From Blastocystis sp. Blastoise (lineage: Eukaryota > Protista > Bigyra: Opalinata): a DNA stretch of 64,000 bases. The stretch spans positions 124,001 through 188,000 of the forward strand of contig JBBPEB010000019.1 of the NCBI GenBank assembly GCA_039096225.1, read 5' to 3'. The notes under the pieces were generated by a model. The model had not been told where the DNA came from, made no database searches, and saw only the letters and a program-made list of their open reading frames with translations. Positions 1,784 to 28,411 of this stretch are shown here, one piece after another. The stretch's first letter is position 1, and each line of letters begins with the position of its first letter. The translations under genes were made by a program, and so were the position numbers.

Positions 1784-1851
1784 TCTTATATCAGGAATTG
1801 AACCTGATAACAATCAATAAATGATTGTTACTCTCCATATAGAGTATAAGA
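1784..1851 (-). ncRNA. tRNA-like cloverleaf, 3'-proximal type, in copy A
   Basis: Minus strand folds as TCTTATA / CTCT-ATATGG-AGAG / TAACAATC-ATTTATT-GATTGTTA / TCAGG-TTCAATT-CCTGA / TATAAGA. Confidence 0.7.
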
Positions 1852-2959: not shown

Positions 2960-3780
2960 GAGTTTAAAAGTGACAATTTTGAAAAATGTGAATTAAGTGG
3001 TCTTAGAGTGAGAGATTCAATATTATGACTTTTATTTAGTAAACTAGACTTATAACTCTATTCTATATTAAAAGGAGAGTCAAAATTATGAAGGTCAAAG
3101 TATATGACCAAATGACAAAATGTGTCTTAAAAAGTAAAAGGGTTTATATATGTGTTTAGAATCATGTATCAAGTCTATTTTATGAATAAGAGCTTTAAAT
3201 AAATAGTTTAAGGTTGTCAAATTTAAAAGAATGTGTAAAACATAGTCTTAAACTATGAATAAAAAATTTAGAGATATTAATTAGTGTACAGCTGTAGTAG
3301 CTCTACAACATATCAAAAGTACAGTTAAAATAATTTTTAAAGAATGGATGTGTGAGGTGTTGTGACTATTATTTAAAATTTATTTTTACTTCAGTTTGAG
3401 CAAAATCGTGTTTTTGGAACACTGTAGAAAAATTAACTTAAAAAATCAACTCTAAGGGTCTTAATTTTTAGAAAATGTAAAAATGAGTGACTTAGAGGAC
3501 GAGATTCAAAATAAGAGCTTTTAGTCATTAAACTAGAGTGTATAACCTATATTATATTAAAAGGAGGGACAAAAATATTTTGATCAAAGTGTATGACCAA
3601 ATGGTAAAGTGTCTTTAAAAAGTCTAAAGTGTTGACTAATGTGTTCATAGGTCTAAATCAAGTTTAATTTTAAAATATTAGCTTTATATAATAAGTTAAA
3701 GGTTGTCTATTTGTCAAAATGTATTAAGTAGTGTCTTAAACAAAGAGATTCAAGAAGTTGACTTTCATTTTATAGATAGC
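2960..3780 (+). repeat. Diverged internal tandem repeat in the Helitron (~490 bp period, GAGATTCAA motifs)
   Basis: The 2981 and 3471 segments align (gagattcaa...ctatattaaaaggag...caaagt.tatgaccaaatg). Related units occur at about 700-1300. Copy D appears to have one unit fewer. Confidence 0.7.
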
Positions 3781-4213
3781 ATGTGTATATAAACACTTTA
3801 TGAAAAGTACTTTAGAAAATATTGTGGATGAGTGTTTTGCCAAATGGTAAAGTTGTATCAAGAGTTGATTGTTTCCATTCCTTTTTGTATAAATCAATGT
3901 TTCGTGTTTACTCTATAAAAATAAATTATTAATACTGAGTTTAACGTTTTAAAGTCGACATGTGTGTTTGGTTTGTTTACTTTTAATTATTAAAATTGAG
4001 TTTAAATTGATAAATTATGTCAGACACGTCTATATTGATTGATTCAAACAGTTTAGAGATAATTTATTTGTTTGAGTATAAATAGATTTGTTCTCATTGT
4101 GACTGTTGTTAAGAAGAGGAAGTCTAAAAAAGCTATAAAAAGTTAGATATATATGTTTAAGATCAAAATTGAAAAGTATAAATTAAAATGGTTTAAAATA
4201 AATTTAAAAAAGA

Positions 4214-4266
<53 letters not shown>

Positions 4267-4299
4267 GTGAATAAAATATTAAAAAATAAAAAAATAACA

Positions 4300-4365
4300 C
4301 TTTATGTCAGGAATTGAACCTGAAAACAATCTATATGATTGTTTCTCTCCTTCTAGAGCATAAAA
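4300..4365 (-). ncRNA. tRNA-like cloverleaf, 5'-proximal type, in copy B
   Basis: TTTTATG / CTCT-AGAAGG-AGAG / AAACAATC-ATATA-GATTGTTT / TCAGG-TTCAATT-CCTGA / CATAAAG. Confidence 0.7.
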
Positions 4366-4420
4366 GGAGTTTATAAATAATAATAATAATCAAATATATA
4401 TATTTATATATATATAATAA

Positions 4421-4795
4421 GAAGGAAATGAAGTGGAAGGATGAGGAAGAAGGAAGTAGGAAGGATTAGGAAGAAGAAGTAAGAATAAGGAAGGATGAGG
4501 AAGAAGGATGAGAAAGAAGGAAGTAAGAAGAAGTAAGAATAAGGAAGGATGAGGAAGAAGGAAGAATCCAGAATGAAGAAGAAGTAAGTAAGAAGAATCA
4601 AAGATGAGGAAGAAGGAAGAAGGAAGTAGGAAGTAGGAAGTAGGAAGCATGAATGAAGAATGAAATAGGAAGAAGGAAGCATGAATGGAGAAGGAAATAG
4701 GAAGAAGGAAGAAGGAATGAAGAAGGAAATAGGAAGTAGAAAGAATGAGAAAGAAGTAAGAAGGAAGAAGAAAGAAGAAAAAAAGAATAAGAAGA
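4421..4795 (+). repeat. Purine-rich (GAA/GGAA) tract in the Helitron
   Basis: About 375 bp, almost all G/A. Inverted counterparts at about 12822-13198 (C) and 26130-26418 (D). Confidence 0.9.
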
Positions 4796-4943
4796 TTTTA
4801 AACCTATATAAAATAGAAAACATATAAAAAAGATAATATAAATAATTAATAAATACATAAATAAATATTAAAAATAAATAAATAAACATATAAAATAAAT
4901 AAATAATAATAAATAAATAAACATATAAATATAATAAATATAA

Positions 4944-4986
<43 letters not shown>

Positions 4987-5551
4987 AATAAATAAATAAA
5001 TAAATAAATAAAATAAATTTAATAAATAAAATATAAATAAATAAAGAAACAATAAATAACAAAAATAATAAATAAAATATAAATATATACATATAAATCA
5101 ACCTGAAACCACAGATTTAAAAGAAAGACATGAAAAAACGAAGAGTATAACACACACATCAGTTACATTTTCTTCCCTATAGAATAAAAATAACTAATAA
5201 TCTATTGATTAATTATATATAAAGAAAATATAAACCAAAAAGATAATAAAAAAAGAAACAATTAAAGAAACAAATGAATTAAAAATGAAATATTATAAAA
5301 AATATATATATTTATATACCTGACACTAAATAAACCATTTCATTTAACCAGGACCACTTCAAGAACCACTAACCATGACAACCAAGGCAAATACAAGAGA
5401 ATCCTATAAAGAAGTGTATTATTTTAAATAAATAAATTAGTATATAAATAGATAAATATAATACTAAGTTAAATAACTTTAAATAAATAAATAAAACACA
5501 CTAAGTCAATCAATACAATAAAATATTTAAAAAAGAGTAAAGAACTATGTT

Positions 5552-5567
5552 TTTTGGGTACCCAAAA
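5552..5567. promoter_or_regulatory. Perfect 16-bp palindrome TTTTGGGTACCCAAAA, candidate bidirectional promoter element
   Basis: Identical at 12051-12066 and 25425-25440. Lies about 190 bp upstream of the RepHel ATG, between oppositely oriented intron polarities. Confidence 0.5.
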
Positions 5568-5761
5568 TGATTTTAAACCAGAATGACCCAATTATTACTT
5601 TTGTAATAAAATCAATGAAAAATTAAGGCAATTTTTGATTTCTATTATGTTTTAAGAAGCATATTTTAAAAATAGACCCTATTATATTTATTAATTCAAA
5701 TGAAATAGGATTGTTAAATACATAATCTAATACTCATTTATATATTAAATTATTAATTATG

Positions 5762-7108
5762 ATGTCTAAGAACAACAAAATTGCTTCAAGGTGGAGGTCT
5801 GGAAATAAAAAATAATTTATATTTCAAAGAAAATCAGGTATATTGTATCTATTTGTTATTAGTATTCATATTTAGGTTCTTCTACTCAATAGAATCCAGT
5901 TATGTATGTTCTTAGTCTTGGTGGTACTTGCTCTGATGGTCTTAAAGGTATATATTTTCCATTTCTTTTTTTATTAATTATTTATTATATTATTTTAGGT
6001 TGTTCTATGTTATTTGTATCATACAGAGGTGGTGGTGTTGCCTGTTATGCTAACTGTGAAGGTATGTTGTCAATGATTTGTTTTTATTTTTTTAACTTTT
6101 CTTTATATATAGGTTCTTCTGTTATTGTAAGTGATTCCAATAGTGATATCGGTGTTGATGTAGGTTCTTCTTGCTTTATAGATGGTATGTTACCAATCAT
6201 TTTTTTTTTTTTTTTATATTTTATTATTATTTTTTTATTATTTTTATATATATAGGTTCTTCAGTTGTTGTACATGTTAACAGTGATGTTGATAATAGAT
6301 GTCTGTGTGGTGTTGAAGGTATGTTGTCATTCATTTATTTTTCTTTTTTTACTTTTATATATATAGGTTTGTTTTATTGATGTAAATGTTGCTATGGATG
6401 TTGTTGGTGATCAGGTAGACTGCTCATATGATATTAAAGGTATATATATATTGTCATTCATTTATTATTATTTTTTTTTATTTATTATTTGTCTATTACT
6501 GTTTCTTTATAGGTTATTCTACTGTTGTGGTTGTAGTTGCTGAACGTATTAATGATGAAGGTATGTCTACTTTTTAAATTTAATTTAGTTTATTATTATT
6601 TTTATCTTATATAGGTCGTTCTTTTCTTATGGAGTCTTGGATTAATGGTAATAATGATACAGGTATATTCTTATTTCTTCCTTTCTTTTTTTTTTGATTT
6701 ATTAATTATCTTTTCATTATATATAGGTTCTTCAAGTCAGTTAAGATATCATGGTGTTTCCTCTGTTCCTTCTTTAGAAGGTATATATATATATTTATTG
6801 TTTATATATATTTTATCATTTATTATATTATATATAGGTGTCTTTTCTAATAGGGGATCTTATCACCCTAATGTTAGCTTTCATTTTAATAATAAAAATG
6901 TATCTAAAGGTATATATATATATATATATATATAACAAATATTTATAATATTTCTTTTAATATATCTATATCTTATATCTATATAGTGATGGTGTGAATA
7001 GTTTTTAATACTGAAGGTATATATATATATGTTAGATATATTTATTATACTATCTCTTATTATATATATATATATCTTTTATCTATATAGGTTCTCTTAG
7101 TGTTATGG
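5762..7108 (+). pseudogene. Degenerate 5' micro-exon array of RepHel in copy B
   Basis: About 12 short exons with TATAG|G...G|GTAT junctions, homologous to D exons 1-11. In-frame TAA in exon 1 and TAG in exon 2, one 73-nt frameshifting exon, and no Rep or helicase exons. Confidence 0.8.
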
Positions 7109-8613
7109 TTATGTTTAGATTTTTTTTTTTAGTTCTTTTTCTTTTTCTTTTGCTTATTATTATTATTATTTTTCACATTTAATAGCTTTCTATTATCTGC
7201 TTTCTTTATATTATTTATTTATTTATGCTGTTGTTATCGTTTTAGCTATTCTATATTTAAATGTTTTCTTTTGTTCTATTTTTGTTTTGTTCTTTTTTTT
7301 TTTTTTTTTTTATTTAAATTGTGTCGACTATTAAGATAATTCTTCAATTACTTAATATATTAAATAGTGTCAAGTTTTTAAATGTTTGGATTCAATTTAA
7401 TTTAAAATATCTATTGTCCACTTTTAACTTTATATAGTATAACTGATTTAATACTGTCAATGATTGAGATATTTAAGTTTTGTTTTTCTCCACTAATTCA
7501 TCTTGCATATATATATTATTGTGTAAATATAAAGTCATAAAAGTAAGTTTAAGGTTGTAAAATTTAAAAAATTGTAAAAAGGGGTTCTTAAACTAAGAGA
7601 TTCGAAATTCTAAAAAATGATTTAATATACACTAAGCTAAATTCTACAACATATTAAAAATTAAGAGAATTTCATTTTTGAAAAGTTAATTAACAATGTG
7701 TTTGAGTTGTCTAGAAATTTTAAAGAGTTAGCTTCTTTGTTTAAAATTGTGTTTTTATTATACTATGAAAATTTTGACTTTTAAAAACAAGTTTAAAGGG
7801 GTTTATTTTTTTAAATGTAGAAATAAGTTACTCAACGGACGAGATTCAATATAAAACATTTTATTTATCAAACTATGAACTATAGTCTAAATTATATTAA
7901 AAGAAGTGACAAAAATACTCTTGAAAAAGTGTATGACCAAATGTAAAATGTTTATAAAGAGTGTTAAAATGGTAACTAATGTATTGATAGAGTTATGTTG
8001 AGTATAGTGTTTAAATATTAGAGTTTTAAATTAACTATAAGTGTGTCAATTTTTCAAAATGTATTAAAAAGCGTCATGAGGTCAGAGATTCAAGACATTA
8101 AACTATAATTAATAAATAATACAATGAGATCTATACTGTGTGAAAGTTATGTCTAAAACGATTTTGATACAGTGGATATCGAAATGGTAAAGTCTCTCTA
8201 AAAGCGATATTGTTGATACTGTTATGTATAAAAATTCTATTTAGATTGATTTCATTAATATTAATTCTAAAACTATGTGTTTAAGTCGTTAATGTGAAAA
8301 TAAATGTTGATATTGTTGTGTTAAATTTGTTTTAGTTTTATGAAATGGTTAAAAATAGTTTAAACTACTTTATTCTAATCTATTTAAATTAATTTAATAA
8401 AATAAAAATATTTTTCAATACTTCACATTGTGACCCATTTCGAGATTTATTAGCTTTAGAAATTCCATAATGATTAAAAAAGTAACTAAACTATTTATAA
8501 ATACAAAATATATTTAAAAAAAAATAAATAACAAATATAATGAATCAAACAAGAATTTATATATTTTTTTTTGTTTTTAGTTTTTCAGATATTATTTAAA
8601 TAATCTATTTAAT

Positions 8614-8681
8614 TCTTATATCAGGAATTGAACCTGATAACAATCAATAAATGATTGTTACTCTCCATATAGAGTATAAGA
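8614..8681 (-). ncRNA. tRNA-like cloverleaf, 3'-proximal type, in copy B
   Basis: Identical to 1784-1851. Confidence 0.7.
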
Positions 8682-8934
8682 AGTTTTATTAAAATAATGT
8701 ATAACTAGGGTCACGCCGCAGGTCCGGGGCCTAACGGCACCGGACCGCGGCTGCAATGAATAATAAGTGTTTGGTTTTTATACAATTTCTTTCCTTATTA
8801 TCTATAATATATTATATATTATATATTATATATTATATATTATATAATATGTATTATTTATTAAATATTATCTATTAGATGTTACTTATTATATATAATA
8901 TATTATATATATTATACATTATTTTAATAAAACT

Positions 8935-9002
8935 TCTTATACTCTATATGGAGAGTAACAATCATTTATTGATTGTTATCAGGTTCAATTCCTGATATAA
9001 GA
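8935..9002 (+). ncRNA. tRNA-like cloverleaf, 3'-proximal type, in copy C
   Basis: Reverse complement of 8614-8681, with a GGTTCAATTCC B-box-like T arm. Confidence 0.7.
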
Positions 9003-10509
9003 ATTAAATAGATTATTTAAATAATATCTGAAAAACTAAAAACAAAAAAAAATATATAAATTCTTGTTTGATTCATTATATTTGTTATTTATTTTTTTTT
9101 AAATATATTTTGTATTTATAAATAGTTTAGTTACTTTTTTAATCATTATGGAATTTCTAAAGCTAATAAATCTCGAAATGGGTCACAATGTGAAGTATTG
9201 AAAAATATTTTTATTTTATTAAATTAATTTAAATAGATTAGAATAAAGTAGTTTAAACTATTTTTAACCATTTCATAAAACTAAAACAAATTTAACACAA
9301 CAATATCAACATTTATTTTCACATTAACGACTTAAACACATAGTTTTAGAATTAATATTAATGAAATCAATCTAAATAGAATTTTTATACATAACAGTAT
9401 CAACAATATCGCTTTTAGAGAGACTTTACCATTTCGATATCCACTGTATCAAAATCGTTTTAGACATAACTTTCACACAGTATAGATCTCATTGTATTAT
9501 TTATTAATTATAGTTTAATGTCTTGAATCTCTGACCTCATGACGCTTTTTAATACATTTTGAAAAATTGACACACTTATAGTTAATTTAAAACTCTAATA
9601 TTTAAACACTATACTCAACATAACTCTATCAATACATTAGTTACCATTTTAACACTCTTTATAAACATTTTACATTTGGTCATACACTTTTTCAAGAGTA
9701 TTTTTGTCACTTCTTTTAATATAATTTAGACTATAGTTCATAGTTTGATAAATAAAATGTTTTATATTGAATCTCGTCCGTTGAGTAACTTATTTCTACA
9801 TTTAAAAAAATAAACCCCTTTAAACTTGTTTTTAAAAGTCAAAATTTTCATAGTATAATAAAAACACAATTTTAAACAAAGAAGCTAACTCTTTAAAATT
9901 TCTAGACAACTCAAACACATTGTTAATTAACTTTTCAAAAATGAAATTCTCTTAATTTTTAATATGTTGTAGAATTTAGCTTAGTGTATATTAAATCATT
10001 TTTTAGAATTTCGAATCTCTTAGTTTAAGAACCCCTTTTTACAATTTTTTAAATTTTACAACCTTAAACTTACTTTTATGACTTTATATTTACACAATAA
10101 TATATATATGCAAGATGAATTAGTGGAGAAAAACAAAACTTAAATATCTCAATCATTGACAGTATTAAATCAGTTATACTATATAAAGTTAAAAGTGGAC
10201 AATAGATATTTTAAATTAAATTGAATCCAAACATTTAAAAACTTGACACTATTTAATATATTAAGTAATTGAAGAATTATCTTAATAGTCGACACAATTT
10301 AAATAAAAAAAAAAAAAAGAAAAAGAACAAAACAAAAATAGAACAAAAGAAAACATTTAAATATAGAATAGCTAAAACGATAACAACAGCATAAATAAAT
10401 AAATAATATAAAGAAAGCAGATAATAGAAAGCTATTAAATGTGAAAAATAATAATAATAATAAGCAAAAGAAAAAGAAAAAGAACTAAAAAAAAAAAAAT
10501 CTAAACATA

Positions 10510-11856
10510 ACCATAACACTAAGAGAACCTATATAGATAAAAGATATATATATATATAATAAGAGATAGTATAATAAATATATCTAACATATATATATAT
10601 ACCTTCAGTATTAAAAACTATTCACACCATCACTATATAGATATAAGATATAGATATATTAAAAGAAATATTATAAATATTTGTTATATATATATATATA
10701 TATATATACCTTTAGATACATTTTTATTATTAAAATGAAAGCTAACATTAGGGTGATAAGATCCCCTATTAGAAAAGACACCTATATATAATATAATAAA
10801 TGATAAAATATATATAAACAATAAATATATATATATACCTTCTAAAGAAGGAACAGAGGAAACACCATGATATCTTAACTGACTTGAAGAACCTATATAT
10901 AATGAAAAGATAATTAATAAATCAAAAAAAAAGAAAGGAAGAAATAAGAATATACCTGTATCATTATTACCATTAATCCAAGACTCCATAAGAAAAGAAC
11001 GACCTATATAAGATAAAAATAATAATAAACTAAATTAAATTTAAAAAGTAGACATACCTTCATCATTAATACGTTCAGCAACTACAACCACAACAGTAGA
11101 ATAACCTATAAAGAAACAGTAATAGACAAATAATAAATAAAAAAAAATAATAATAAATGAATGACAATATATATATACCTTTAATATCATATGAGCAGTC
11201 TACCTGATCACCAACAACATCCATAGCAACATTTACATCAATAAAACAAACCTATATATATAAAAGTAAAAAAAGAAAAATAAATGAATGACAACATACC
11301 TTCAACACCACACAGACATCTATTATCAACATCACTGTTAACATGTACAACAACTGAAGAACCTATATATATAGAAATAATAAAAAAATAATAATAAAAT
11401 ATAAAAAAAAAAAATAAATGATTGGTAACATACCATCTATAAAGCAAGAAGAACCTACATCAACACCGATATCACTATTGGAATCACTTACAATAACAGA
11501 AGAACCTATATATAAAGAAAAGTTAAAAAAATAAAAACAAATCATTGACAACATACCTTCACAGTTAGCATAACAGGCAACACCACCACCTCTGTATGAT
11601 ACAAATAACATAGAACAACCTAAAATAATATAATAAATAATTAATAAAAAAAGAAATGGAAAATATATACCTTTAAGACCATCAGAGCAAGTACCACCAA
11701 GACTAAGAACATACATAACTGGATTCTATTGAGTAGAAGAACCTAAATATGAATACTAATAACAAATAGATACAATATACCTGATTTTCTTTGAAATATA
11801 AATTATTTTTTATTTCCAGACCTCCACCTTGAAGCAATTTTGTTGTTCTTAGACAT
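10510..11856 (-). pseudogene. Degenerate RepHel micro-exon array in copy C
   Basis: Reverse complement of 5762-7108. Confidence 0.8.
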
Positions 11857-12631
11857 CATAATTAATAATTTAATATATAAATGAGTATTAGATTATGTAT
11901 TTAACAATCCTATTTCATTTGAATTAATAAATATAATAGGGTCTATTTTTAAAATATGCTTCTTAAAACATAATAGAAATCAAAAATTGCCTTAATTTTT
12001 CATTGATTTTATTACAAAAGTAATAATTGGGTCATTCTGGTTTAAAATCATTTTGGGTACCCAAAAAACATAGTTCTTTACTCTTTTTTAAATATTTTAT
12101 TGTATTGATTGACTTAGTGTGTTTTATTTATTTATTTAAAGTTATTTAACTTAGTATTATATTTATCTATTTATATACTAATTTATTTATTTAAAATAAT
12201 ACACTTCTTTATAGGATTCTCTTGTATTTGCCTTGGTTGTCATGGTTAGTGGTTCTTGAAGTGGTCCTGGTTAAATGAAATGGTTTATTTAGTGTCAGGT
12301 ATATAAATATATATATTTTTTATAATATTTCATTTTTAATTCATTTGTTTCTTTAATTGTTTCTTTTTTTATTATCTTTTTGGTTTATATTTTCTTTATA
12401 TATAATTAATCAATAGATTATTAGTTATTTTTATTCTATAGGGAAGAAAATGTAACTGATGTGTGTGTTATACTCTTCGTTTTTTCATGTCTTTCTTTTA
12501 AATCTGTGGTTTCAGGTTGATTTATATGTATATATTTATATTTTATTTATTATTTTTGTTATTTATTGTTTCTTTATTTATTTATATTTTATTTATTAAA
12601 TTTATTTTATTTATTTATTTATTTATTTATT

Positions 12632-12674
<43 letters not shown>

Positions 12675-13252
12675 TTATATTTATTATATTTATATGTTTA
12701 TTTATTTATTATTATTTATTTATTTTATATGTTTATTTATTTATTTTTAATATTTATTTATGTATTTATTAATTATTTATATTATCTTTTTTATATGTTT
12801 TCTATTTTATATAGGTTTAAAATCTTCTTATTCTTTTTTTCTTCTTTCTTCTTCCTTCTTACTTCTTTCTCATTCTTTCTACTTCCTATTTCCTTCTTCA
12901 TTCCTTCTTCCTTCTTCCTATTTCCTTCTCCATTCATGCTTCCTTCTTCCTATTTCATTCTTCATTCATGCTTCCTACTTCCTACTTCCTACTTCCTTCT
13001 TCCTTCTTCCTCATCTTTGATTCTTCTTACTTACTTCTTCTTCATTCTGGATTCTTCCTTCTTCCTCATCCTTCCTTATTCTTACTTCTTCTTACTTCCT
13101 TCTTTCTCATCCTTCTTCCTCATCCTTCCTTATTCTTACTTCTTCTTCCTAATCCTTCCTACTTCCTTCTTCCTCATCCTTCCACTTCATTTCCTTCTTA
13201 TTATATATATATAAATATATATATTTGATTATTATTATTATTTATAAACTCC

Positions 13253-13318
13253 TTTTATGCTCTAGAAGGAGAGAAACAATCATATAGATTGTTTTCAGGT
13301 TCAATTCCTGACATAAAG
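13253..13318 (+). ncRNA. tRNA-like cloverleaf, 5'-proximal type, in copy C
   Basis: Reverse complement of 4300-4365, followed within a few nt by a T7 run. Confidence 0.7.
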
Positions 13319-13348
13319 TGTTATTTTTTTATTTTTTAATATTTTATT

Positions 13349-13407
<59 letters not shown>

Positions 13408-15492
13408 TCTTTTTTAAATTTATTTTAAACCATTTTAATTTATACTTTTCAATTTTGATCTTAAACATATATATCTAACTTTTTATAGCTTTTTTAGACT
13501 TCCTCTTCTTAACAACAGTCACAATGAGAACAAATCTATTTATACTCAAACAAATAAATTATCTCTAAACTGTTTGAATCAATCAATATAGACGTGTCTG
13601 ACATAATTTATCAATTTAAACTCAATTTTAATAATTAAAAGTAAACAAACCAAACACACATGTCGACTTTAAAACGTTAAACTCAGTATTAATAATTTAT
13701 TTTTATAGAGTAAACACGAAACATTGATTTATACAAAAAGGAATGGAAACAATCAACTCTTGATACAACTTTACCATTTGGCAAAACACTCATCCACAAT
13801 ATTTTCTAAAGTACTTTTCATAAAGTGTTTATATACACATGCTATCTATAAAATGAAAGTCAACTTCTTGAATCTCTTTGTTTAAGACACTACTTAATAC
13901 ATTTTGACAAATAGACAACCTTTAACTTATTATATAAAGCTAATATTTTAAAATTAAACTTGATTTAGACCTATGAACACATTAGTCAACACTTTAGACT
14001 TTTTAAAGACACTTTACCATTTGGTCATACACTTTGATCAAAATATTTTTGTCCCTCCTTTTAATATAATATAGGTTATACACTCTAGTTTAATGACTAA
14101 AAGCTCTTATTTTGAATCTCGTCCTCTAAGTCACTCATTTTTACATTTTCTAAAAATTAAGACCCTTAGAGTTGATTTTTTAAGTTAATTTTTCTACAGT
14201 GTTCCAAAAACACGATTTTGCTCAAACTGAAGTAAAAATAAATTTTAAATAATAGTCACAACACCTCACACATCCATTCTTTAAAAATTATTTTAACTGT
14301 ACTTTTGATATGTTGTAGAGCTACTACAGCTGTACACTAATTAATATCTCTAAATTTTTTATTCATAGTTTAAGACTATGTTTTACACATTCTTTTAAAT
14401 TTGACAACCTTAAACTATTTATTTAAAGCTCTTATTCATAAAATAGACTTGATACATGATTCTAAACACATATATAAACCCTTTTACTTTTTAAGACACA
14501 TTTTGTCATTTGGTCATACACTTTGACCTTCATAATTTTGACTCTCCTTTTAATATAGAATAGAGTTATAAGTCTAGTTTACTAAATAAAAGTCATAATA
14601 TTGAATCTCTCACTCTAAGACCACTTAATTCACATTTTTCAAAATTGTCACTTTTAAACTCGTTATTTTAAAACTCTGTTTTAACTATAGTAGTTTGATG
14701 ACCTATTGATTACTATGCTACAATATTAGTCCATTATAAGAAGATCGAAGAAAATATCGATCACTCAAAAATCGTCCTCAGGAGCTCAAAATCGCTACAC
14801 CTAGGTTTTTGGACCTCCTGAATCAGAATATCATGTCAAATTGAGAATCTAAATTTGACCGTTAAGGCCTCACGTGTTCAATATGAAAAAGTATTAAAAA
14901 ATAGATAAATATAAAGAATAAACACGGATAACGTATATTGTGGGATTGAGAAAAAATCAAGTTTACCCCATGTTTATTTTTCAATTGTCTGGTCAACAAT
15001 TTTTATCGGGGTCACCCCAAAGAGCCAATCAAAAACGACTCAAAAATCATGTTTTCTGTTTTTTTATTAATAACTTTTTAATTATAAACAATATCGCTTA
15101 TCCAAATATACGGTGCAAAACTACACGTTATATCGTATTGAACTGTGTTTCAACCAAAAGTTAACTCCCCGTAAGTTTAGAGGAGTTGCGGCGACAAACT
15201 ATAGTATATAGTAGCCAATCAAATGGTTTTTCCAAAAACTGACCAATGGGAATTTTTTTGCCTATTTGCTTTATAATAGTAATGATATATATAATATATT
15301 ATATATAATAAGTAACATCTAATAGATAATATTTAATAAATAATACATATTATATAATATATAATATATAATATATAATATATAATATATTATAGATAAT
15401 AAGGAAAGAAATTGTATAAAAACCAAACACTTATTATTCATTGCAGCCGCGGTCCGGTGCCGTTAGGCCCCGGACCTGCGGCGTGACCCTAG

Positions 15493-16547: not shown

Positions 16548-16837
16548 AAAATTTTGTACTCATTTCAAAAATAAATGTTTTCATATTTACTAGGGTAACG
16601 CCGCTGGCGCACCGCCTAACGGCGACGCGCCGCGGCTGCGTTGTTCAGTTGGGTTTTAAAATTTTTTATTAAACTTTATAGAACAAAACCATTTTTTTTA
16701 TTATAAACATTTTAAAAACAAATAAAAAGTGAAAAAGTAAAAAATTAAAAAGAACAAATATTTAACAAACATAAAACAAATAAAACAAAAGAAACAAAAG
16801 AAATAAAAGAAGAGAGGAGAAAAAAAAAATAAAGCAT

Positions 16838-19800
16838 TTAATTATTTAGAGTAGACCTGAAGACCACGTTCTTAGTAAATATTTCATTACTACTACTAAT
16901 CATCTTACCTTGAGAAACACTATCAACTACCTTAATAAAAAGAGAGTTGAAAGATCGGGCACGACTAAAAGCAACATAGAGTTGACCATGAGAGAAGACA
17001 GGACGATCTAAATAAACACCAACTCTTTCAAATGTTTGTCCTTGAGATTTGTTGATAGTCATTGCGAACGCTAAACGAATAGGAAATTGTCTTCTGGATA
17101 TAATAATAGGAAGATCTTCAGGATTTGAATTACAGATAATTCTTGGAATAATAACAGTACGTTCATCAATAGTAAGAGAAGGAGGAGGATTTAAAATAGT
17201 AGCAGTAATATTATTTGATCCTAATCGAGTAACTATAAGTCTAGTACCATTACATAATCCTTTAGAAGGATTAAGATTTCTTAAAAGCATAATGATACAA
17301 CCTATTTTTAAATTTAATATATGAGGAGGCATTCCAGAAGGTGTTTGAGAATTAATAAACTCGATAGGATAATTTGATTCTGGATCATCTGTTTCAGAAT
17401 CAAGAATAGAATCAGAAGAGATATAAGGAGTAGTAGTTCCAGAAAGAAGATTATCTACAATGAAATCATTTAAAGTACCAACACAATCATTAGTAGAAGC
17501 TAATATAACAGAAGAAGCTAATCGTTTAATATCAGAATCAAGAGAAGTATTGATTCTATGTCCAAATACAGTAACACATAAATCATCATTTACAATACAT
17601 TGAGGAGGAATAGGAATATAATCTATATCTAAATGATGACTAATAGTATAATTATTAGAAAGAACACCATCTCCTACTTGTAATAACCATTGTCTAAAAT
17701 CATCTGCTCCTTCTAAAGCTCTCATATTTCTTGATAAATGAATGACATTATTCTTTATCGAATTCCATAAGGAACAAAACTTTATAGAAGAACTAACAAT
17801 CTGAGCTTGAGTTCCTTTTCTTATAACTGGTAAACATTGTCTGAAATCTCCTCCTAATACTACTGTTTTACCACCAAAAGGAATATCTAATTCTGTATTC
17901 ATTATATCACATAATAATCTATGTACTACCATAAAGCAATCACCTTTCATCATAGGAGCTTCATCCCATATTATTAAATCAGCTATTCTTATTTCTTCTA
18001 CTTTTCTTCTATCTCTAGCTAAATCTATATTTGAAGTAGAATCAGGATCAACATTCAAAGGAATACCAAATTGTTTATGAGCTGTTCTACCACCTGGTAA
18101 TAAAGTAGAAGCAATTCCTGTTGAAGCTACAGGTAATACATTCTTATTATGTCCACGTAAATAACTTAATAAACTATTATATAAGAAAGTCTTTCCACTT
18201 CCACCTGGACCATCTATAAAGAAACATAACTTATCTTCTATTCTACTACTTTCTATTGAATGAATTACTCTATCAAATGCATTTCTTTGTTCTTCATTTA
18301 ATAATTCTATTACTCTATTAGCTTCTTGTAATTCTAAAGTAGGATTATAATTATAATCATTATAATGATGTTGTTCTTCTACTTGAGGTAATCCTAAATC
18401 ATTATAATTCACTCCTATACTTATCATCATCTCTTTTATATCTTGTAAAGTACGTATTTCATAATCTTGAAGAACACTATTAGTATCATCTTCTATAACA
18501 CTTGATGAATCTAAATCTTGAGCTAAAGGAGTATTTATATAATCTATTTCATTATTATGCATTGAATGTTTATAATCTTCACTAAGAAATGATTTAAATC
18601 GAATCCAAAACTCTTTTACATTTGTTAATAATGATTCTGAAATATAAGTAATAAATAATTGTCTCAATTGACATGGAGTAGCAAAAACAATAGCTTCTGA
18701 AAATGAATCAAATACTTCTCTCTCATTATTCAATAATCCTCTTGCTATAGCTGCTTCACTAAAGGTTCTATAAGGTTCATTACGATTCAATCCTTTTACT
18801 ATCTTCAAAGAATCAAAGCTATCAGCTCCTTTCGTATTCAATAATAATAATCTCAAAGCATATCGTTCTTTATCTTTTGGATTCACATAATACATTCTTC
18901 CTAAAGCTTTTATATCTCTCTGACGTCTATTCCAAGTATTTGTATTCGATTTCCATACATAATATTTTGGTATTTCATGATAAGCATAAATAGGATATTT
19001 CTCATCTAATATTTTCAATAATTCTTCTGATATATTATCATCATCTACTTCATAACTATTTATTCTATTTATCTCTTCTAAACGAACTTGAATCAATTCT
19101 CTTTCTTCTTCTACATTATTCATATTACGAATACCATGCTTCTTCTCTATATAATAATAAGTATATATCTTTCTTTGATTCTGAACTTCTTTCTCTAAAT
19201 CAAAGTATTTTGTTAATTTAGTACCTTTCTCTAAACTATTTCTTAATGCTTCTTCTTCGTGTCCTTCTCGAAATAATATATATGGATCATCAGGTAAATG
19301 AATAGGTAATCTATTAATAGAAACAGAATTATAAGTAATTTCAAAACAATTCAAACGATAAGAAGCTTCAGGAGGAGAAACATATCGACAATCTAAATAA
19401 GCTTGAGTTTCATCTACTATTCCATTATCATTCACTCTTCTTAATTGAGCTATCACAGAATCATTTCCTTTTAATGCATATTTATATATATATTTAGTAC
19501 TTTGAATATTACAACAGACTTCTACATTAATATGAGCTTGATATTTCAATAATAAATAAGGATTATAAGGAACTACCCAACGATTATCAATAGTATAAGT
19601 ATTATGACTACGAATAAGAGTAATAGTTCTATCAGGAATATTTCTTCTTTGATATAAAGGATAAGAATTTAAATGACAATTAGTTTGCTCTATATATTCT
19701 TTTGGAAATCTCTTACTACATTTACCTGTTGATCTATCAATACAAACACAATTCGTATCATAATCAGGACCACATGGACCATGAATCATATGTTTCTTAA

Positions 19801-21844
19801 CTAATTCATAAAGAAGAGGAGTTGATTCTTTATCGGGAATCTCTGCACTTATTATACTATCTACTTCATCTTCTGTTCTATATTTAGAATTCGTATCTAA
19901 AATAATTAATATATGAGAATGTGGTAAACCTCTCTTTTGGAATTCTACTGAATATAATAAAGCTTCTACAGTACCAAATATATTCTTATCCTTTATATCA
20001 GAAAGCAATTGTTTCAACTTTAAATGAAACACTCTTGAAACTAAATCTGGAAATTCATTAACAGTATAACCTTCTGGAATATTATTCTTTATTTCTAACC
20101 AATCTGGATTGCAAGTAAATGTAATAAATAAATCAGGTTTACCATATTCTCGAACTACACTCATAGCATCCATATATTTCTGTTGTAAATTTCTTGGACT
20201 ACCAACAAAAGAAGAAGGTAATATAATAGCTTTACCTATTCTATCTATATTTCTATCATTCTCATTTATTTGATCTCCTCTCTCTTCTAACATATTATTT
20301 ATATTCTGATAAGTTGAAGCTCTTAACTTATTTTGATTATTTCGTATATAATTAATTCTATTTTGTTCAACTCGGATATAATTATCAGTAATATATTGTA
20401 AAGTTAATTTCTTATATTTTAATAAATAATTATCATAAGGTGGATTTTTCATTTGAAGCATATAATTATAATATTCTAACATAGTAATAGTAATTTGATT
20501 AGAACGATTCAATGATAATAAATCTGGATACCAACCTTGTCTTCCAGTTGGAAACATAACTGGATAAACCATACAATCTATATATGAATTAGTATTCTTC
20601 ATTACTATATATTGACCTGAAGTATAACGATTCTGTTCATTATTACTATTAGTAGCTACTATTTCCATACCACTTCTAGGAAAACAACAATAACTTCTTT
20701 CTGGCATTACTCCTCCTTCTCTATATTGATATATTACTGCTACTTCATCTACTTGAGGAGTATTATATCTTCTTATATCAGGTACTTCTCTTCTTTGTTT
20801 CTTAAATTCTATTAATAAATTAATATTACTTCTATTCATTTGACTATTCTCTTCTATTACTTCATCTACTCTTTCTCGAAGTGAATTATATATTTGAGCT
20901 AATGGATGATATTCTCTTATTGTACTATCTAATATCTCTAAAATATTTGGTTTTAAATCACAAAAATATCGATTCATACTTCTCATATGAGTAGCTTCAT
21001 CTCCATCTATCATATAATATTGATTGAATACAGGATGTCTTGTAGGATCATTCACATCAAAATCTAAAGCACTCTTAAAAGTATGATATATATTACCTCC
21101 ACATTTAAATAATAAAGGTCCAGAAGAATTTCTTAAATCATCATCAGAAGTATTATTTCCAGCTAAAGAAGCTAAAGCAACAGAATTATTATATCGAATT
21201 ATATTATTAATAAATTCTCTTGAATCTGGATTATCTCTTCTTAATAAAGAACGAATAGTATTAGGAAGATCAGGAAGTTCAGGAAGAACTACTTTACCAC
21301 TACCACAGCAAGTATAAAACTTATCATTCATTCCTTTCTCTAATTCAAAATGTTTAGCATGACAATATTCACAATGAACATTAAAATCACCTAAATAATT
21401 AGCTTTATAAGTATTCAATGCTTCATTTAATACAAAATCACCATGAGAATCTATATAAAATAATATAAAATAAATATTTATATATATAAATACTTCTTTG
21501 AATAGAAGCAATACAATTATGTAATCCAGGATATAATAATCTTTGTTGATTATCTATAAAAATAATTTATTATTTAATTATTTATAAAGAATTATAAAAA
21601 ATAAATAGCATACAAATATCTAAAGCTCTTCTTCTTCCTCTATTAATAATAGGATGAATAATTATATCTTCTTCAACTATAAATAAAATTTAATAAATAT
21701 ATTTAAATAATAAAAAAACATACTATTATCTGTTATAGGTCTTCTAATAGTTCTTACAACTGGTATTTCATCATTATTTTGAGTATTACTATTAATATTA
21801 GGAAAAGGATCAATATAATCAGAATCAGAATCATTATCAGAAAA

Positions 21845-21875
<31 letters not shown>

Positions 21876-24800
21876 TCACTTGAACTACTACTACTACTAT
21901 TAGGTATTGTTGTTATAATTTCTGATTCATTATCATTATTTAAATTAATATGAGGAATATTTGTTAGAATACTTAAAGGAGGAAGAATAGGACTTAAATC
22001 AGGAATAGTTAAATAACTATTCATAATGGAATTAATAGATCTATTATTTCTATGTATTATTGTTTCATTATTATTAGTATTAGTGTTATTTCTTGAATGA
22101 TTCGTATTATCATTAATGATTGTAGAATTATTATTGTTAGATATACTTACATCAGTTGGAATAGTAGTAACAACAGATAAAGAGTGTGAAGAAGTATTAA
22201 TAGAATCATTATTATTATTAGAAACAGAAGTATTATTTTCTGTAGGTTGTATAATAGTAGTTGATATAGGAATAGATGAATTATTATTATTAATTTGACT
22301 TTGAACAATAGATATGTTATTAATTGATTGATTAACTGGATTCATTTGATTGAATAGGTTTGAACCATTATTTAATATAGAATTATTATTATTTATTTGT
22401 GAATAACTATTATCTATATCAATATCAATATTGTTATTTGAATTATTGTTTTGAATGTTTTGTAAAGGAATATTATTTTGAAAATTAAAAGTCGAAAACA
22501 AAGCTAAAGGTTTAGTGTTAAAACCAAATGATTTAGATAAATCATTATTATTTATTTTATCCTTATTGGAACCTATATATATTAATAGTTAGATATTAAT
22601 TATATTATGTTTAAGTTTAGAATAAAGTTTAGTTGTGTATTATATAAATTAACTTTCATTGTTATAGTTACTGAAGTAATTATTAATTAATATAAAGTAT
22701 AACCTTTATTAATATAATATAATACATAGATATAGTATGATAATATATATATTAATTTAAAGTATAACCTTTATCAATATAATATAAGTCATAGATATAC
22801 TATGATATATATTAATTAATATAAAGTATAACCTTCATCAATATAATATGATACATAAGTATAGTATGATATATTAATTAATATAAAGTATAACCTTTAT
22901 TAATATAATATAAGTCATAAGTATAGTATGATATATATTAATTAATATAAAGTATAACCTTTATTAATATAATAATACATAGAATATAATATGATATATA
23001 TTAATTAATATAAAGTATAACCTTCATCAATATAATATAATACATAAGTATAGTATGATATATATTAATTAATATAAAGTATATAACCTTTATTAATATA
23101 ATAATACATAGATATACTATGATATATTTATTAATATAAAGTATATAACTCTTATTAATATAATAATACATAGTTATACTATGATATATTTATTAATATA
23201 AAGTATATAACCTTTATTAATATAATAATAAATAGATATACTATGATATATTTATTAATATAAAGTATATAACCTTTATTAATATAATAATACATACATA
23301 TAGTATGATATATTAAATAATATAAAGTAAAAACTTTATTAATTAATTATTATCTTCAATACTATAATGTAATGAAAGATAATATTATAATTAATGAAAA
23401 CTAATATTAAATAAGTATAGGTAATTAGTATTGTATAATTTATTAAACAATCTATATGATTCAACCTCATAGAGGACATCTATAGCTATTGTGCTTTGTT
23501 ACAACATTCTATAAACATATAGCTAACTACCAGTTAATATCATATACAATGTGAGTAAGTGAAGAATCTTAACACTTAGATATCTCAATCATTGATAGTA
23601 TTACATCGGTTAGACTATATAGAGTTAGAAGCGAACAATAGTCAGCAATAGTATGAGTCATATAGGTAATCAATAGTTGTATTAATTAAATTAAATACAA
23701 ATATTAAAATACTCAACACTATTTAATATTAAGTAATTCAAAAATTATCTTAATATCCGACACCTTCCCGTATATATCGACACGATTAAAGTAAAATTAA
23801 AATAAAAAAAAAATAACAAAACAAAAAGGAAAAAAGAAAGGATTCTATTAAATATTTAAATACTAAGTAGCTAAAGCTAAGCTTAGTAAATAAATATATA
23901 AATAGATAATAAAAAGAAAGCAGATAACAGAAAGCTATTATCTGTGAAAGAAAAAAAATAATAAAACAAAAGAAAAAGAAACTAAAATAATAAATAATAC
24001 TTACCCACAACTTTATTTGAACCTATATAAGTATAGAATATAATATAAGTATAAATATACCTTGAATAATTGAAGAACCATTGACACCATCAACGACTGA
24101 AGAATTATTAACACCATCACCTATATATATATATACAATAGTATAAGTATAAATAAATAAATAATATTATATATATATATATATATATACCTTTATATAT
24201 ATTAGTAGTAACCATATCAAGACCAACATCAGAGTCACACGATCCCAAATTAAAAGACACACCTATATAGAATCATAAAATAGAATAAACATAGATACAT
24301 ATATATATGTATATACCTTCTGAAGAAGGAATAGAGGAATGACCATGTACTAACTGAGTTGAAGGACCTATATAAAAACAAATAAGAAAGAATTAAAAGA
24401 AAAATAATAAATATATATATATGATATATCTATATACCTTTAGCATTAGAAGGATGATCACCATCAGATACAGTACCATGAACAGAAGACACTATCAGAA
24501 CAGAAGGACCTATATATATTTATAAAATAAAAGTATAAATCAAAAAGAAGAAAAAGAAAATATATTATATATACCTTCTTTATGAATAACATCAGCACTA
24601 ACATTCACAGCAACAGAAGAACCTATAATAAAATATAAATAGGAAATAAAAGAAATAATTAAAAATAAATAAATAAATGAATGATTATATACCTTGAAGA
24701 CCATGAGTAGAGTTAACACCACCATCAATAGCATCAGCAACAACATCATCATGAGTATAAGAACCTATAGATAAATAAAAATTAAAAAAAATAAAATAAA

Positions 24801-25232
24801 TGATTGACAACATACCTTCAAGACCGTGAGTAGAGTTAGCATCACCATCAATAGCTCCAGCAACAGAGTCCACAACAATAGAAGAACCTATAGAAAATAA
24901 AATATAAAAATAAAAACAAATGAATGCCAACATACCTTCAAGACCACACGATAACCTTACACCATCATCAGAATAGGACACCATGGACATAGAAGAGCCT
25001 AAGATGATATAAAATAATAAAACAAAAAGAAATGTATAAATATATACCTTCAAGACCATATTGATAAGCACCATCACCATCAATGACATCCATGCTTGCA
25101 TCCATCTGAGTAGAAGAACCTATATATGAATAATAATAAAGAATGGTAAAACATACTTGACCGTCTTTGAGAAATATAGCTTTTCCTATTTTCAGACCTC
25201 CGCCTGGACGACATCCGAGTCTTCTTAGGCAT
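16838..25232 (-). CDS. Helitron RepHel (HUH Rep plus Pif1-like helicase), predicted 15 exons, ~2086 aa
   Basis: The last exon (21450-16838) has a Cys cluster CEYC...CCGSGKV, Rep motifs FITFTCNP, EFQKRGLPHSHIL and YIYKY, and helicase motifs GPGGSGKT, IWDEAPM, GDFRQCLPV, TINKSQGQT and HGQLYVAFSR. Upstream exons are inferred from GT-AG sites and frame continuity, with lower certainty. Confidence 0.93.
22680..23345. repeat. AT-rich minisatellite, ~58-bp unit, ~11 copies, in RepHel intron 11
   Basis: Repeated attaatataaagtataacctttattaatataatataatacatagatatagtatgata. Confidence 0.9.
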
Positions 25233-25587
25233 CTTATTTAATAACTAATTATAAAATAAGTATTTTTATGAAGAAAACAAAATCTTATTTTGATTTCAAT
25301 TTTTGTAAAATAGGGTCAACATTTAAAATATGTATCTTTAAAAATATAATGAATCATAATTAACCTCGAATTTTTATTAATTTTATTGCTAAACTGATAA
25401 TTGGGTCATTTTTTGTTAAAAACATTTTGGGTACCCAAAAACTGTAGTTTTTTACATTTTTTAATTATTTGATTATATTGATTGTCTGTATATGTTTTAT
25501 TAATTAATTTGATATTGTTTAGTTATTATTTTTATATTTATATATATAGATTTATTTATTTATTGAAAATAATACACTTTTCTATAG

Positions 25588-26533
25588 GATTCTTTTGTAT
25601 TTGTCTTGGTTGTGGTGATAGAAGCTTCTTGAAGTGGTCCTGGTTGTGCTACATGGCTTATTTATTGTCAGGTATATAAATATATATATTTTTTATAATA
25701 TTTTCTTTTTCATTTGTCCATTCATCTGTTTTACTTATTATTTTATTTGTGTATTTTATTTATTTTTTCTTTATATATAATTTATTCTATATATTGTTAA
25801 TTATTTTTATTCTATAGGAAGAAAATGTTGTTGATGTGTTGTGGTTTTCGTTTTTTTATGTCTTTCTTTTTTAATCTGTGGTTCCAGATTAATTTATAGG
25901 TATATATTTATATTTTATTTATTATTTTTATTATTTATATGTTTATTTATTTATTTATTTATTTATTATATTTATTTATTATATTTATTCATTTATTTTA
26001 TTTTATTTATTAATTTTATATTATTTATTTATTTATTTATTATATTTATTTATTATATTTATATTATTTATTTATCATATTTATATTATTTATTTATTTA
26101 TATGTTTTTATTGTATATAGGTTTAATAGTCTTCTTATTCTTTCTTTCTTCTTCCTTCTTCATTTTACTTCTTCCTTCTTCCTTATTCTTCTTTCTTCTT
26201 CCTACTTCTTCCTGCTTCATCATTCATCATTCTTCCTTCTTTCTTCTTTCCCATCCTTGATTCTTCCTTCTTCCTTCTTCTTTATCCCTGATTCTTCCTT
26301 CTTCCTTATCCTTGATTCTTCCTACTTCCTTCTTCTTCATCCTTAATTCTTCCTTCTTCTTCTTCATACTTCCTTATTCCTCATCCTTCCTACTTCTTCC
26401 TCTTCATTTCCTTCTTATTATATATATATATATATATTTAATTATTATTATTACTCTTTAAACTCCCTTTATGCTCTAGAAGGAGAGAAGCAATCATTAT
26501 AGATTGTTTTCAGGTTCAATTCCTGACATGAAG
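25588..26533 (+). ncRNA. Putative spliced transcript divergent from RepHel, ending at the tRNA-like element
   Basis: Host-type TATAG acceptors at 25587, 25817 and 26120, GTATAT donors at 25672 and about 25900, and T-rich introns. Acceptors are conserved in copies B and C. No shared ORF. Confidence 0.42.
26467..26533 (+). ncRNA. tRNA-like cloverleaf in autonomous copy D
   Basis: CTTTATG / CTCT-AGAAGG-AGAG / AAGCAATC-ATTATA-GATTGTTT / TCAGG-TTCAATT-CCTGA / CATGAAG, followed by T runs. Confidence 0.72.
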
Positions 26534-28411
26534 TCTTATTTTTCTTTTTTTAAATATTTTATTTACATATTATTATATATATATATATTCTCTTTTTTTA
26601 ATTTATTTTAATCCAGTTTAATTTATACTTTTCAATTTTGACCTTATATATATATATCTAACTTTTTATAGTTTTTTTAGACTTACTCTTCTCAACAACA
26701 GTCACAATGAGAACAAATCCATTTTAACTGAAACAACTAAGTCATCTCAAAACTGTTTGAATCAATCAGTATAGACGTGTATGACATAATTTATGTATTT
26801 AAACTCAATTTTAATAATTAAAAGTAAACAAACCAAACACACATGTTGACTTTAAAACTTTAAACTCAGTGTTAAATGGTTAGTTATAAAGAGTAGACAC
26901 AAAACATTGATTTATACTAAAAGGAATGAAAACAATCAACTCTTGATACAACTTTACCATTTGACAAAACACTCATCCACAATATTTTTCAAAGTTCTTT
27001 TAGTGAAGTGTTTATATAGACATATAATGTATAAAATGAAAGTCAACTCTTTGAATCTCTTATTTTAGGACAGTCTTTAAAACATTTTGACAAATAGAGA
27101 ACATTTAACTTGTTATTTAAAGCTAATATTTTAAGAGTAGACTTGACTTGAATGAATAAAAACAACAGCTAACACTTTAAACATTTTAAGACATACTTTA
27201 CATTTTGCCGATACACTTTGACCTTCATAATTTTGACTCTCCTTTTAATATAGTATGGAGTATTATCTCTAGTTTATTAAATAAAAGTCATTATATTGAA
27301 TCTCTCACTCTAAGACCACTTAATTCACATTTTTCAAAATTGTCACTTTTAAACTCGTTATTTTAAGACTTTGTTTCTACTATAGTAGTTTGAGGACCTA
27401 TTGATTACTATGATACAATATTAGTCAATTATAAGAAGATCGAAGAAAATATCGATCACTCAAAAATCGTCCTCAGGAGCTCAAAATCGCTACACCTAGG
27501 TTTTTTGACCTCCTGAATCAGAATATCATGTCAAATTGACAATCTAAATTTGACCGTTAAGGCCTCACGTGTTCAATATGAAAAAGTCTTTAAAAATAGA
27601 TAAATATAAAGAATAAACACGGATAACGTATATTGTGGGATTGAGAAAAAATCAAGTTTACCCCATGTTTATTTTCCAATTGTCTGGTCAACAATTTTTA
27701 TCGGGGTCATCCCAAAGAGCCAATCAAAAACGACTCAAAAATCATATTTTCTGTTCTTTTATTAATAACTGTTTAATTATAAATAATATCGCTTAACCAA
27801 ATATATGTTGCAAAACTACACGTTATATCCTATTGAACTGTGTTTTAACCAAATCTTAACTCCCCGTAAGTTTAGAGGAGTTGAGGCTACAAACTCTAGT
27901 ATATAGTAGCCAATCAAATGCATTTTCCAAAAACTGACCAATGGGAATTTTTTTGCCTATTCTCATATATATAGTAATGATATTTATATTTTTTATATTT
28001 CCTCTTATTTGTATTTTATATCAATACTATAATAATATTAACTTGCTATAAATATGTATATACTTTGAATTGCCCAAAATGGGTGCCAATCTGTTTTTGT
28101 TTTTGGTTTCTGATATTCTTTTTTCATTAGTAACCTATAGATAGAATGTATTAGCAATATGAATGCAGAAATTATAAAAATATATGAATACTCCTTCAAA
28201 GAGGGAAGAATGCTAATAAATAACAAAGAAATTATGACAAATTTTTAATTAATGATAATCTACTGTAATAAAAAAATATTCTTATTGTGGTGAAATACAT
28301 AATAATAGAAGAAAAAGGAGAATAAACAAAAAAAATAACAAATCCACTTTTTTTTGTCAAAAATACTTTTTTAAACAAAAAAACCACAAAAATAAACAAA
28401 AAATACGACCA

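What the first reader, a model, noticed from the sequence alone, without database searches (positions are those of the whole stretch)
26467..26533. Helitron family carries a covarying, non-canonical tRNA-like cloverleaf on its antisense strand
Seen: six copies in three variants (1784-1851, 8614-8681, 8935-9002; 4300-4365, 13253-13318; 26467-26533). All fold into a 7-bp acceptor-like stem, a 4-bp D arm with GG in the loop, an 8-bp third arm, and a 5-bp T arm with loop TTCAATT. There are no linker bases and no variable loop, and the third loop varies in size (5/6/7 nt), so this is not a decoding tRNA. Pairing is kept by compensatory changes: acceptor pair 1 is T-A, T.G or C-G; pair 2 is C-G or T-A; pair 7 is A-T or G-C; the first pair of arm 3 is T-A or A-T. 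The G.U wobbles work only on the strand antisense to the element. Established: the D-loop GG/T-loop elbow is what RNase P and RNase Z recognise (as in mascRNA/menRNA), and GGTTCRANNCC is the Pol III B box. Inference: this is a selected structural RNA encoded by a rolling-circle transposon. It could be a processing signal, a Pol III/TFIIIC boundary or decoy, or the source of a 3'-OH RNA complementary to the transferred strand that primes second-strand synthesis. I know of no such Helitron feature, but I cannot search.
Basis: partly seen in the sequence, partly recalled or inferred. Interest (0 to 1): 0.9.

Follow-up and report, generated by a model that had tools for sequence, protein, structure and literature searches.

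The report
Transposon-borne mascRNA-like tRNA mimic
Two unrelated kinds of DNA jumping gene in a tortoise-gut Blastocystis carry about 250 copies of a small tRNA-shaped element that cannot read codons but whose shape is kept by selection, which suggests that the transposons borrow the host's tRNA-cutting enzymes; no RNA from it has yet been seen.

Summary
The cloverleaf is real. The genome is tortoise Blastocystis sp. Rus-B. The six window copies are three distinct sequences. Genome-wide there are 246 exact T-arm matches in at least four types. Ten variants pair at 97.5%, with 7 of 24 pairs changed on both sides; flanks between types are at shuffle level. The shape matches mascRNA (no linker bases, D-loop GG, canonical T loop), but there is no Rfam match and no triple-helix A-tract. 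New here: it is not Helitron-specific. A 20-kb MULE carries two copies, and a second active Helitron family has none, which weakens the second-strand-primer idea. It stays under selection in non-autonomous copies, so it probably acts in cis. Best guess (0.40): an RNase P/Z cutting site that ends transcripts on the strand opposite the transposase gene. Main rival (0.30): a stand-alone Pol III gene. It was found in one genome only. The scan has noted the same element on other pieces of this genome.

The parts
26467..26533 (+). Cloverleaf type A1 (67 nt), antisense to Helitron H1, 1.45 kb inside its 5' end; T5 run 6 nt downstream
13253..13318 (+). Cloverleaf type A5 (66 nt) in non-autonomous element N1
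8935..9002 (+). Cloverleaf type B1 (68 nt), 230 bp inside the 3' end of N1
4300..4365 (-). Cloverleaf type A5 in the + strand copy of N1
8614..8681 (-). Cloverleaf type B1 in the + strand copy of N1
1784..1851 (-). Cloverleaf type B1 in a third N1 copy that ends at 2081
16590..27980 (-). Autonomous Helitron H1: 5' TC, 3' GC-rich hairpin and CTAG, inserted between A and T; about 20 near-identical RepHel copies in the genome
16838..25232 (-). RepHel gene: long last exon 16838-21511 with Helitron_like_N and PIF1 domains, micro-exons upstream (matches the annotated 2079-aa protein P0001)
25588..26466 (+). Predicted divergent spliced non-coding transcript running from the RepHel promoter region to the cloverleaf: exon 25588-25671, exon from 25818 to about 25900, U/C-rich last exon from 26121. 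Predicted only
   Evidence: Splice motifs like the RepHel introns, only on +, conserved in N1 at 12214, 12299, 12441, 12528, 12814
25425..25440 (.). 16-bp perfect palindrome between the RepHel start and the divergent exons, identical in N1; candidate bidirectional promoter element (inference)
8705..15285 (-). Non-autonomous Helitron N1 (6.6 kb) with one type A and one type B cloverleaf 4.3 kb apart
2336..15492 (+). Second N1 copy (2336-8704 plus 15286-15492), split by the inverted N1 inserted into it

Best explanation
A non-decoding tRNA mimic that the transposon uses as a cis-acting cutting site. Shown: the fold is selected; it keeps the acceptor/T-arm stack and the D-loop GG/T-loop elbow; it has lost the linkers, any fixed anticodon and any fixed acceptor identity; it stays conserved in non-autonomous copies; it travels in Helitron and MULE elements. 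Inferred: a Pol II transcript that runs over it folds the mimic. In type A this is the divergent spliced transcript from the RepHel promoter; in type B it is read-in from flanking DNA through the 3' end. Host RNase P cuts at its 5' side and RNase Z at its 3' side, as for mascRNA. With no triple helix to protect it, the upstream RNA is left unprotected and the downstream RNA uncapped, so the transcript is destroyed and ended. The copy that carries the site makes less antisense or double-stranded RNA and escapes Argonaute silencing or interference at its termini. A 66-68-nt RNA is released as a by-product.
For: Covariation: 97.5% of cells paired, 7 pairs changed on both sides, 0/500 shuffles reach the score, slid controls 41-49% paired. 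Island of conservation: 75-82% identity between types against flanks at or near shuffle level. In non-autonomous subfamilies B1 and B2 only 2 of 68 bases differ, and they form one compensatory pair, while the downstream 590 bp differ by 26% (binomial P 3e-7). 43 of 47 non-autonomous 3' ends have an antisense cloverleaf 213-725 bp away. Splice motifs lead to type A on its own strand in two subfamilies, and a U/C-rich tract precedes types A and C. The architecture equals that described for mascRNA/menRNA, which lack the linker residues, need the two D-loop G's and are cut by RNase P and Z (PMC11693755). The A box departs from consensus. The host has a Piwi-domain gene.
Against: No RNA evidence at all. 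Type B has lost the upstream exons, so a read-in transcript has to be assumed. In long flanking context the folding model gives the acceptor and D arms of types A and C near-zero probability because of competing pairings (tertiary contacts not modelled). Type A has a T5 run at +6, as host tRNA-Asp genes do, and a perfect B box, which fits Pol III as well. A second active Helitron family does without it. The anti-silencing benefit is pure inference.
Confidence: 0.4

Rival explanations
1. Stand-alone Pol III small RNA gene. TFIIIC binds the B box and a shifted A box, a short precursor is trimmed to 66-68 nt, and the active gene gives its own element a tRNA-gene-type barrier or open chromatin, or the RNA acts as a decoy (as viral VA or TMER RNAs do; from own knowledge).
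For: Perfect B box in all types. T at position 6 is invariant and position 7 is always a purine, at the spacing of A-box T8/R9 from the GG. T5 at +6 in every type A variant examined, against 3.5% at random positions. TA run ends about 30 nt upstream in types A and B. Type B stays selected without upstream exons. The excised form is the minimum-energy fold.
Against: First T4 run lies at +13 to +90 in type B and at +36 in type C. A-box G10 is absent and positions 14-16 vary. A DNA barrier needs only the boxes, not compensated stems. A decoy acting in trans would not be kept by non-autonomous copies.
Confidence: 0.3
2. Primer or single-strand origin for second-strand synthesis on the Helitron circle; the MULE copies are passive cargo taken from a lost Helitron lineage.
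For: Always antisense to the Helitron strand in the copies mapped. Cis selection fits. Circular intermediates are known (PMC4778049). Types B and C also fold as single-stranded DNA on either strand.
Against: 22 type C and at least 7 type D full-length copies, most in the MULE context. Helitron family 2 is intact and multi-copy without it. None near the closest foreign RepHel genes. The 3' acceptor strand, which would be the primer end, varies.
Confidence: 0.12
3. A captured host or organellar tRNA or SINE head, carried passively and kept alike by gene conversion or a lower mutation rate.
For: Helitrons and MULEs capture DNA. Helitron annotations overlap a tRNA-Cys cluster in Arabidopsis (PMC10701932). 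Variant B3 has two broken pairs and several copies. B4 looks recombinant.
Against: Seven double changes, loop-length changes confined to loops, and sharp conservation boundaries. No SINE body or tail; copies move inside DNA transposons. No Rfam tRNA match.
Confidence: 0.08
4. An unusual decoding or suppressor tRNA of the host.
For: ARAGORN calls type C tRNA-Ile(AAT). Type B1's 7-nt loop has UUA at the anticodon position.
Against: Loops of 5-7 nt with different triplets, U at position 37, 6-8-bp stem, no linkers, and variable first pairs and discriminator base (U, A, C). The host has ordinary tRNA genes.
Confidence: 0.02

Closest known systems
mascRNA / menRNA (3' tRNA-like elements of vertebrate MALAT1 and NEAT1)
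   Same: 7-bp acceptor, no linker residues, D-loop GG directly before the 3' D strand, long third stem with a non-decoding loop, 5-bp T stem with 7-nt T loop (PMC11693755); here too it follows a predicted non-coding Pol II transcript
   Different: 66-68 nt rather than about 58; no sequence or Rfam match; no upstream A-tract or triple helix; about 250 copies inside DNA transposons of a stramenopile. PMC12941219 calls MALAT1 and NEAT1 the only lncRNAs matured by the tRNA machinery, so this would be convergence
Canonical eukaryotic tRNA gene (Pol III type 2)
   Same: Perfect B box and T arm, GG, 7-bp acceptor, T run just downstream in type A
   Different: No 8/9 linker, no variable loop (2 nt in type C), third arm 6-8 bp, loop 5-7 nt, degenerate A box
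tRNA-derived SINEs and tRNA genes overlapping Helitrons (Arabidopsis tRNA-Cys cluster, PMC10701932)
   Same: tRNA-derived sequence inside or next to mobile DNA
   Different: Those are canonical tRNAs or retroposed heads; this is a remodelled non-decoding fold under selection within DNA transposons of two superfamilies
Viral tRNA-like small RNAs (MHV68 TMERs, adenovirus VA RNAs; from own knowledge, not tested)
   Same: A selfish element encoding a structured small RNA that uses host Pol III or RNase Z
   Different: Those act in trans; here selection in non-autonomous copies points to cis action, and no miRNA hairpin follows

Membership tests
canonical tRNA | 7-bp acceptor and 5-bp T stem with canonical T loop | tested here: met
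canonical tRNA | linker bases 8/9 and 26, variable loop of 4 nt or more | tested here: not met
   helices abut in types A and B; 2-nt gap only in type C
canonical tRNA | 5-bp anticodon stem, 7-nt loop with U33 and purine 37 | tested here: not met
   6-8 bp, 5-7 nt, U at 37
canonical tRNA | match to Rfam tRNA or ARAGORN | tested here: not met
   none for types A and B; type C is called by ARAGORN but not by Rfam
mascRNA/menRNA | linker-less four-way junction with D-loop GG and T-loop elbow residues | tested here: met
   against PMC11693755; secondary structure only
mascRNA/menRNA | sequence or covariance-model match to the family | tested here: not met
   no Rfam hit at E up to 5-10
mascRNA/menRNA | upstream triple helix ending in a genomic A-rich tract | tested here: not met
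   longest A run in the last 40 nt is 2-4
mascRNA/menRNA | cut from a Pol II lncRNA by RNase P and RNase Z, CCA added | not testable with these tools
Pol III type 2 gene | B box | tested here: met
Pol III type 2 gene | A box | tested here: inconclusive
   fails strict and relaxed patterns; T, R and GG are in register but G10 is missing and positions 14-16 vary
Pol III type 2 gene | oligo-T terminator close downstream | tested here: inconclusive
   T5 at +6 in type A; first T4 at +13 to +90 in type B and +36 in type C
tRNA-derived SINE | shared body and tail, dispersed independently of other elements | tested here: not met
   flanks unalignable between types; copies lie at fixed places inside Helitron and MULE elements
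Helitron (carrier H1/N1) | 5' TC, 3' hairpin and CTAG, A/T target, RepHel protein | tested here: met
MULE (second carrier) | MULE and SWIM transposase; related motifs at both ends | tested here: met
MULE (second carrier) | 9-bp target duplication | not tested
   both ends of one copy were not in hand

The most novel reading that the evidence does not exclude
DNA transposons of different superfamilies share a portable cis-acting RNA device: a convergently evolved mascRNA-like mimic that recruits host RNase P/Z to cut and end the element's own antisense transcripts, or to process a transposon lncRNA. This would be an RNA-based self-protection module not described for any DNA transposon in the papers I could search.
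Probability: 0.35. Interest if true: 0.9.

Novelty: new variant of a known kind. Interest (0 to 1): 0.72.

Why it matters
Linker-less tRNA mimics are known from two vertebrate lncRNAs. An apparently independent one, amplified to hundreds of copies in a protist and kept intact by both rolling-circle and cut-and-paste transposons, would show that selfish DNA elements can co-opt tRNA processing. The natural variants give a ready test set for what RNase P and RNase Z need, and the element offers a direct test of how DNA transposons handle antisense transcription and silencing.

Tried and rejected
ARAGORN and Rfam on the window: nothing. A cloverleaf pattern scanned against metagenome, viral and prokaryotic contigs gave 40 hits, none a relative; best model score 25 bits against 80-96 for true copies. 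Six contigs around the closest non-Blastocystis RepHel genes: no cloverleaf. The MULE transposase search returned only this genome, so other hosts could not be checked. Paper searches found no Helitron- or DNA-transposon-borne tRNA mimic; the library is incomplete. Rejected: the varying distance from type B to the 3' end as a deletion series (it is microsatellite expansion); a conserved leader switch (the competing hairpin is perfect only in A5 and absent in B); a UAA suppressor reading of B1 (other variants have other loops).

Full report
Observation. The six stretches are present as stated. At 26467-26533 (+) the sequence folds into a four-way junction with a 7-bp acceptor, a 4-bp D stem with a 6-nt loop ending in GG, an 8-bp third stem and a 5-bp T stem with a canonical 7-nt T loop. 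Energy is -19.4 kcal/mol, z -3.4; the opposite strand gives -11.3, z -1.4. ARAGORN and Rfam find nothing in the window. The six copies are three distinct sequences: five lie in near-identical copies of one element.

Host and carrier. The long ORF at 16838-21511 (-) is a Helitron RepHel, 99% identical to a protein of Blastocystis sp. Blastoise. The genome size of 33.3 Mb matches tortoise isolate Rus-B in PMC12129017. The autonomous element H1 spans 16590-27980 (-) with 5' TC, a 3' hairpin, CTAG and an A/T target; about 20 near-identical RepHel copies exist. The cloverleaf lies 1.45 kb inside the 5' end, antisense, pointing outward, 1.2 kb upstream of the RepHel start. The non-autonomous element N1 (8705-15285) carries a type A copy in the same position and a type B copy 230 bp inside its 3' end.

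Copy number and covariation. The 17-nt T arm has 246 exact matches in the genome, and its reversed control has none. From the loci in hand I recovered ten distinct variants. Of 240 cells 97.5% pair; 7 of 24 pairs change on both sides (three in the acceptor, four in the third arm); no shuffle of 500 reaches the paired fraction or the covariation score; slid structures pair at 41-49%. The sequences are related, so this is not a formal probability, but length changes fall only in loops. Between types A, B and C the cloverleaf is 75-82% identical while the flanks are at or near shuffle level. Non-autonomous subfamilies B1 and B2 differ at 2 of 68 bases, which form one compensatory pair, against 26% divergence in the next 590 bp (P about 3e-7). 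Of 47 non-autonomous 3' ends on the contigs fully listed, 43 have an antisense cloverleaf within 213-725 bp. Selection in elements that encode nothing implies a benefit to the carrying copy, that is action in cis (inference). One variant, B3, has two broken pairs and still has several copies, so the constraint is not absolute.

It is not a rolling-circle feature. A second Helitron family in the genome (RepHel about 43% identical, intact frames, at least eight copies) has no cloverleaf or T-arm motif. A third type, C (locus L044:2284-2351), lies 1.3 kb inside an end that is not a Helitron end. All 18 copies of that end have a type C cloverleaf at the same distance. In six loci a MULE transposase lies a constant 17.6 kb from that end, and in a seventh 20.4 kb. 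The protein has MULE and SWIM domains, and the two ends of the ~20-kb element share a repeated 15-bp motif. A model built on type C finds 22 full-length copies at 79-104 bits, and a fourth type, D, as a full 68-nt match (57 bits) 4.1 kb upstream of C on the same strand in six of these MULE loci and 6.9 kb in the seventh. I could not read type D or the other type C variants, so selection inside the MULE is likely but not shown. Outside this genome nothing related was found.

Context of transcription. Between the RepHel start and the type A cloverleaf, the cloverleaf strand carries acceptor and donor motifs like those of the RepHel introns (acceptors 25587, 25817, 26120; donors 25672 and about 25900), with none on the other strand in the stretches scanned; all recur in N1. 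The last predicted exon is U/C-rich and ends in a TA run about 30 nt before the cloverleaf. Type C also follows a U/C-rich tract of more than 2 kb; type B has lost it. There is no A-rich tract for a MALAT1-type triple helix. Type A is followed by T5 at +6, as host tRNA-Asp genes are; types B and C are not. The B box is perfect and the A box is degenerate. In long flanking context the folding model disfavours the acceptor and D arms of types A and C, whereas the excised RNA folds as drawn. The host has a Piwi-domain gene. I worked beside those places afterwards.

Mechanism. Shown: a selected tRNA-shaped fold that keeps what RNase P and RNase Z read in mascRNA (PMC11693755) and drops what decoding and charging need. 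Inferred, 0.40: it is a cis-acting cleavage site that cuts and ends Pol II transcripts on the strand opposite the Helitron's transposase gene, lowering antisense RNA and silencing. In the MULE it lies on the transposase strand, 16 kb downstream, facing the end, where it would end outgoing transcripts. Rival, 0.30: a stand-alone Pol III gene acting as a barrier or decoy. The primer model (0.12) is weakened by the MULE copies and by Helitron family 2. Passive capture (0.08) and a decoding tRNA (0.02) are largely excluded.

Comparison and verdict. It looks like mascRNA/menRNA and may work like them, but it is not a member: no model match, no triple helix, different host and setting. It fails the tests for a canonical tRNA and for a SINE. 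The nearest transposon precedent I found is canonical tRNA-Cys genes overlapping Helitron annotations in Arabidopsis (PMC10701932). Five paper searches found no transposon-borne mimic. I rate it a new variant of a known kind of RNA in a new setting, interest 0.72, limited by one genome and no expression data. Other readers and two follow-up agents of this scan noted the same element on other pieces of this genome; that is not independent evidence.

Noticed in passing
window 2336-15492: A non-autonomous Helitron inserted in inverted orientation into its own twin, giving a 13-kb near-palindrome; similar head-to-head spacings of cloverleaves recur on other contigs.
   Followed up: partly
window 16590-16640 and 8705-8755: The long 3' terminator hairpins of H1 and N1 differ in sequence but look structurally equivalent; covariation not counted.
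   Followed up: no
window 23950-25232 (-): The RepHel N-terminus is built from many short, similar micro-exons that encode a Ser/Asp/Gly-rich region absent from the Pfam domains.
   Followed up: no
window 25425-25440; L044:3580-3660; L045:2761-2910: The palindrome in the Helitron promoter region shares a 9-base core with the motif repeated at both MULE ends; it may be a common host-factor site or chance.
   Followed up: no
L044:1-2040, L045:7000-9973, L041:1-6300: The large MULE is filled with multi-kb purine-rich and pyrimidine-rich tracts in opposite orientation near its two ends (about 65% alike), which could form long RNA duplexes.
   Followed up: no
L094:1971-9638 and L095 (JGI metagenome contigs): A Helitron-type RepHel gene sits next to a Pox_A32-like packaging ATPase (E 9e-11) and a small ORF with a phage tail-fibre-like hit; possibly a virus-like or Polinton-like element using RepHel.
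   Followed up: partly
G000:C9:16-26894 and G000:C12:4721-19013: Dense tRNA clusters in mirrored order on two contigs, probably the organellar (MRO) genome assembled twice.
   Followed up: no
G000:C2:20195, C2:789699, C8:2367428, C16:272881, C24:918811: T-arm or cloverleaf matches with no Helitron 3' end or MULE end mapped nearby; possible further types or carriers.
   Followed up: no
window 28474-28555 and 29188-29267: An 82-bp inverted repeat (95%) bounding about 800 bp; probably a MITE.
   Followed up: no
window 32946-36299 (-) and 54909-62015 (+): Large proteins with repeated He_PIG Ig-like domains; the second also has a hormone-receptor-like domain.
   Followed up: no
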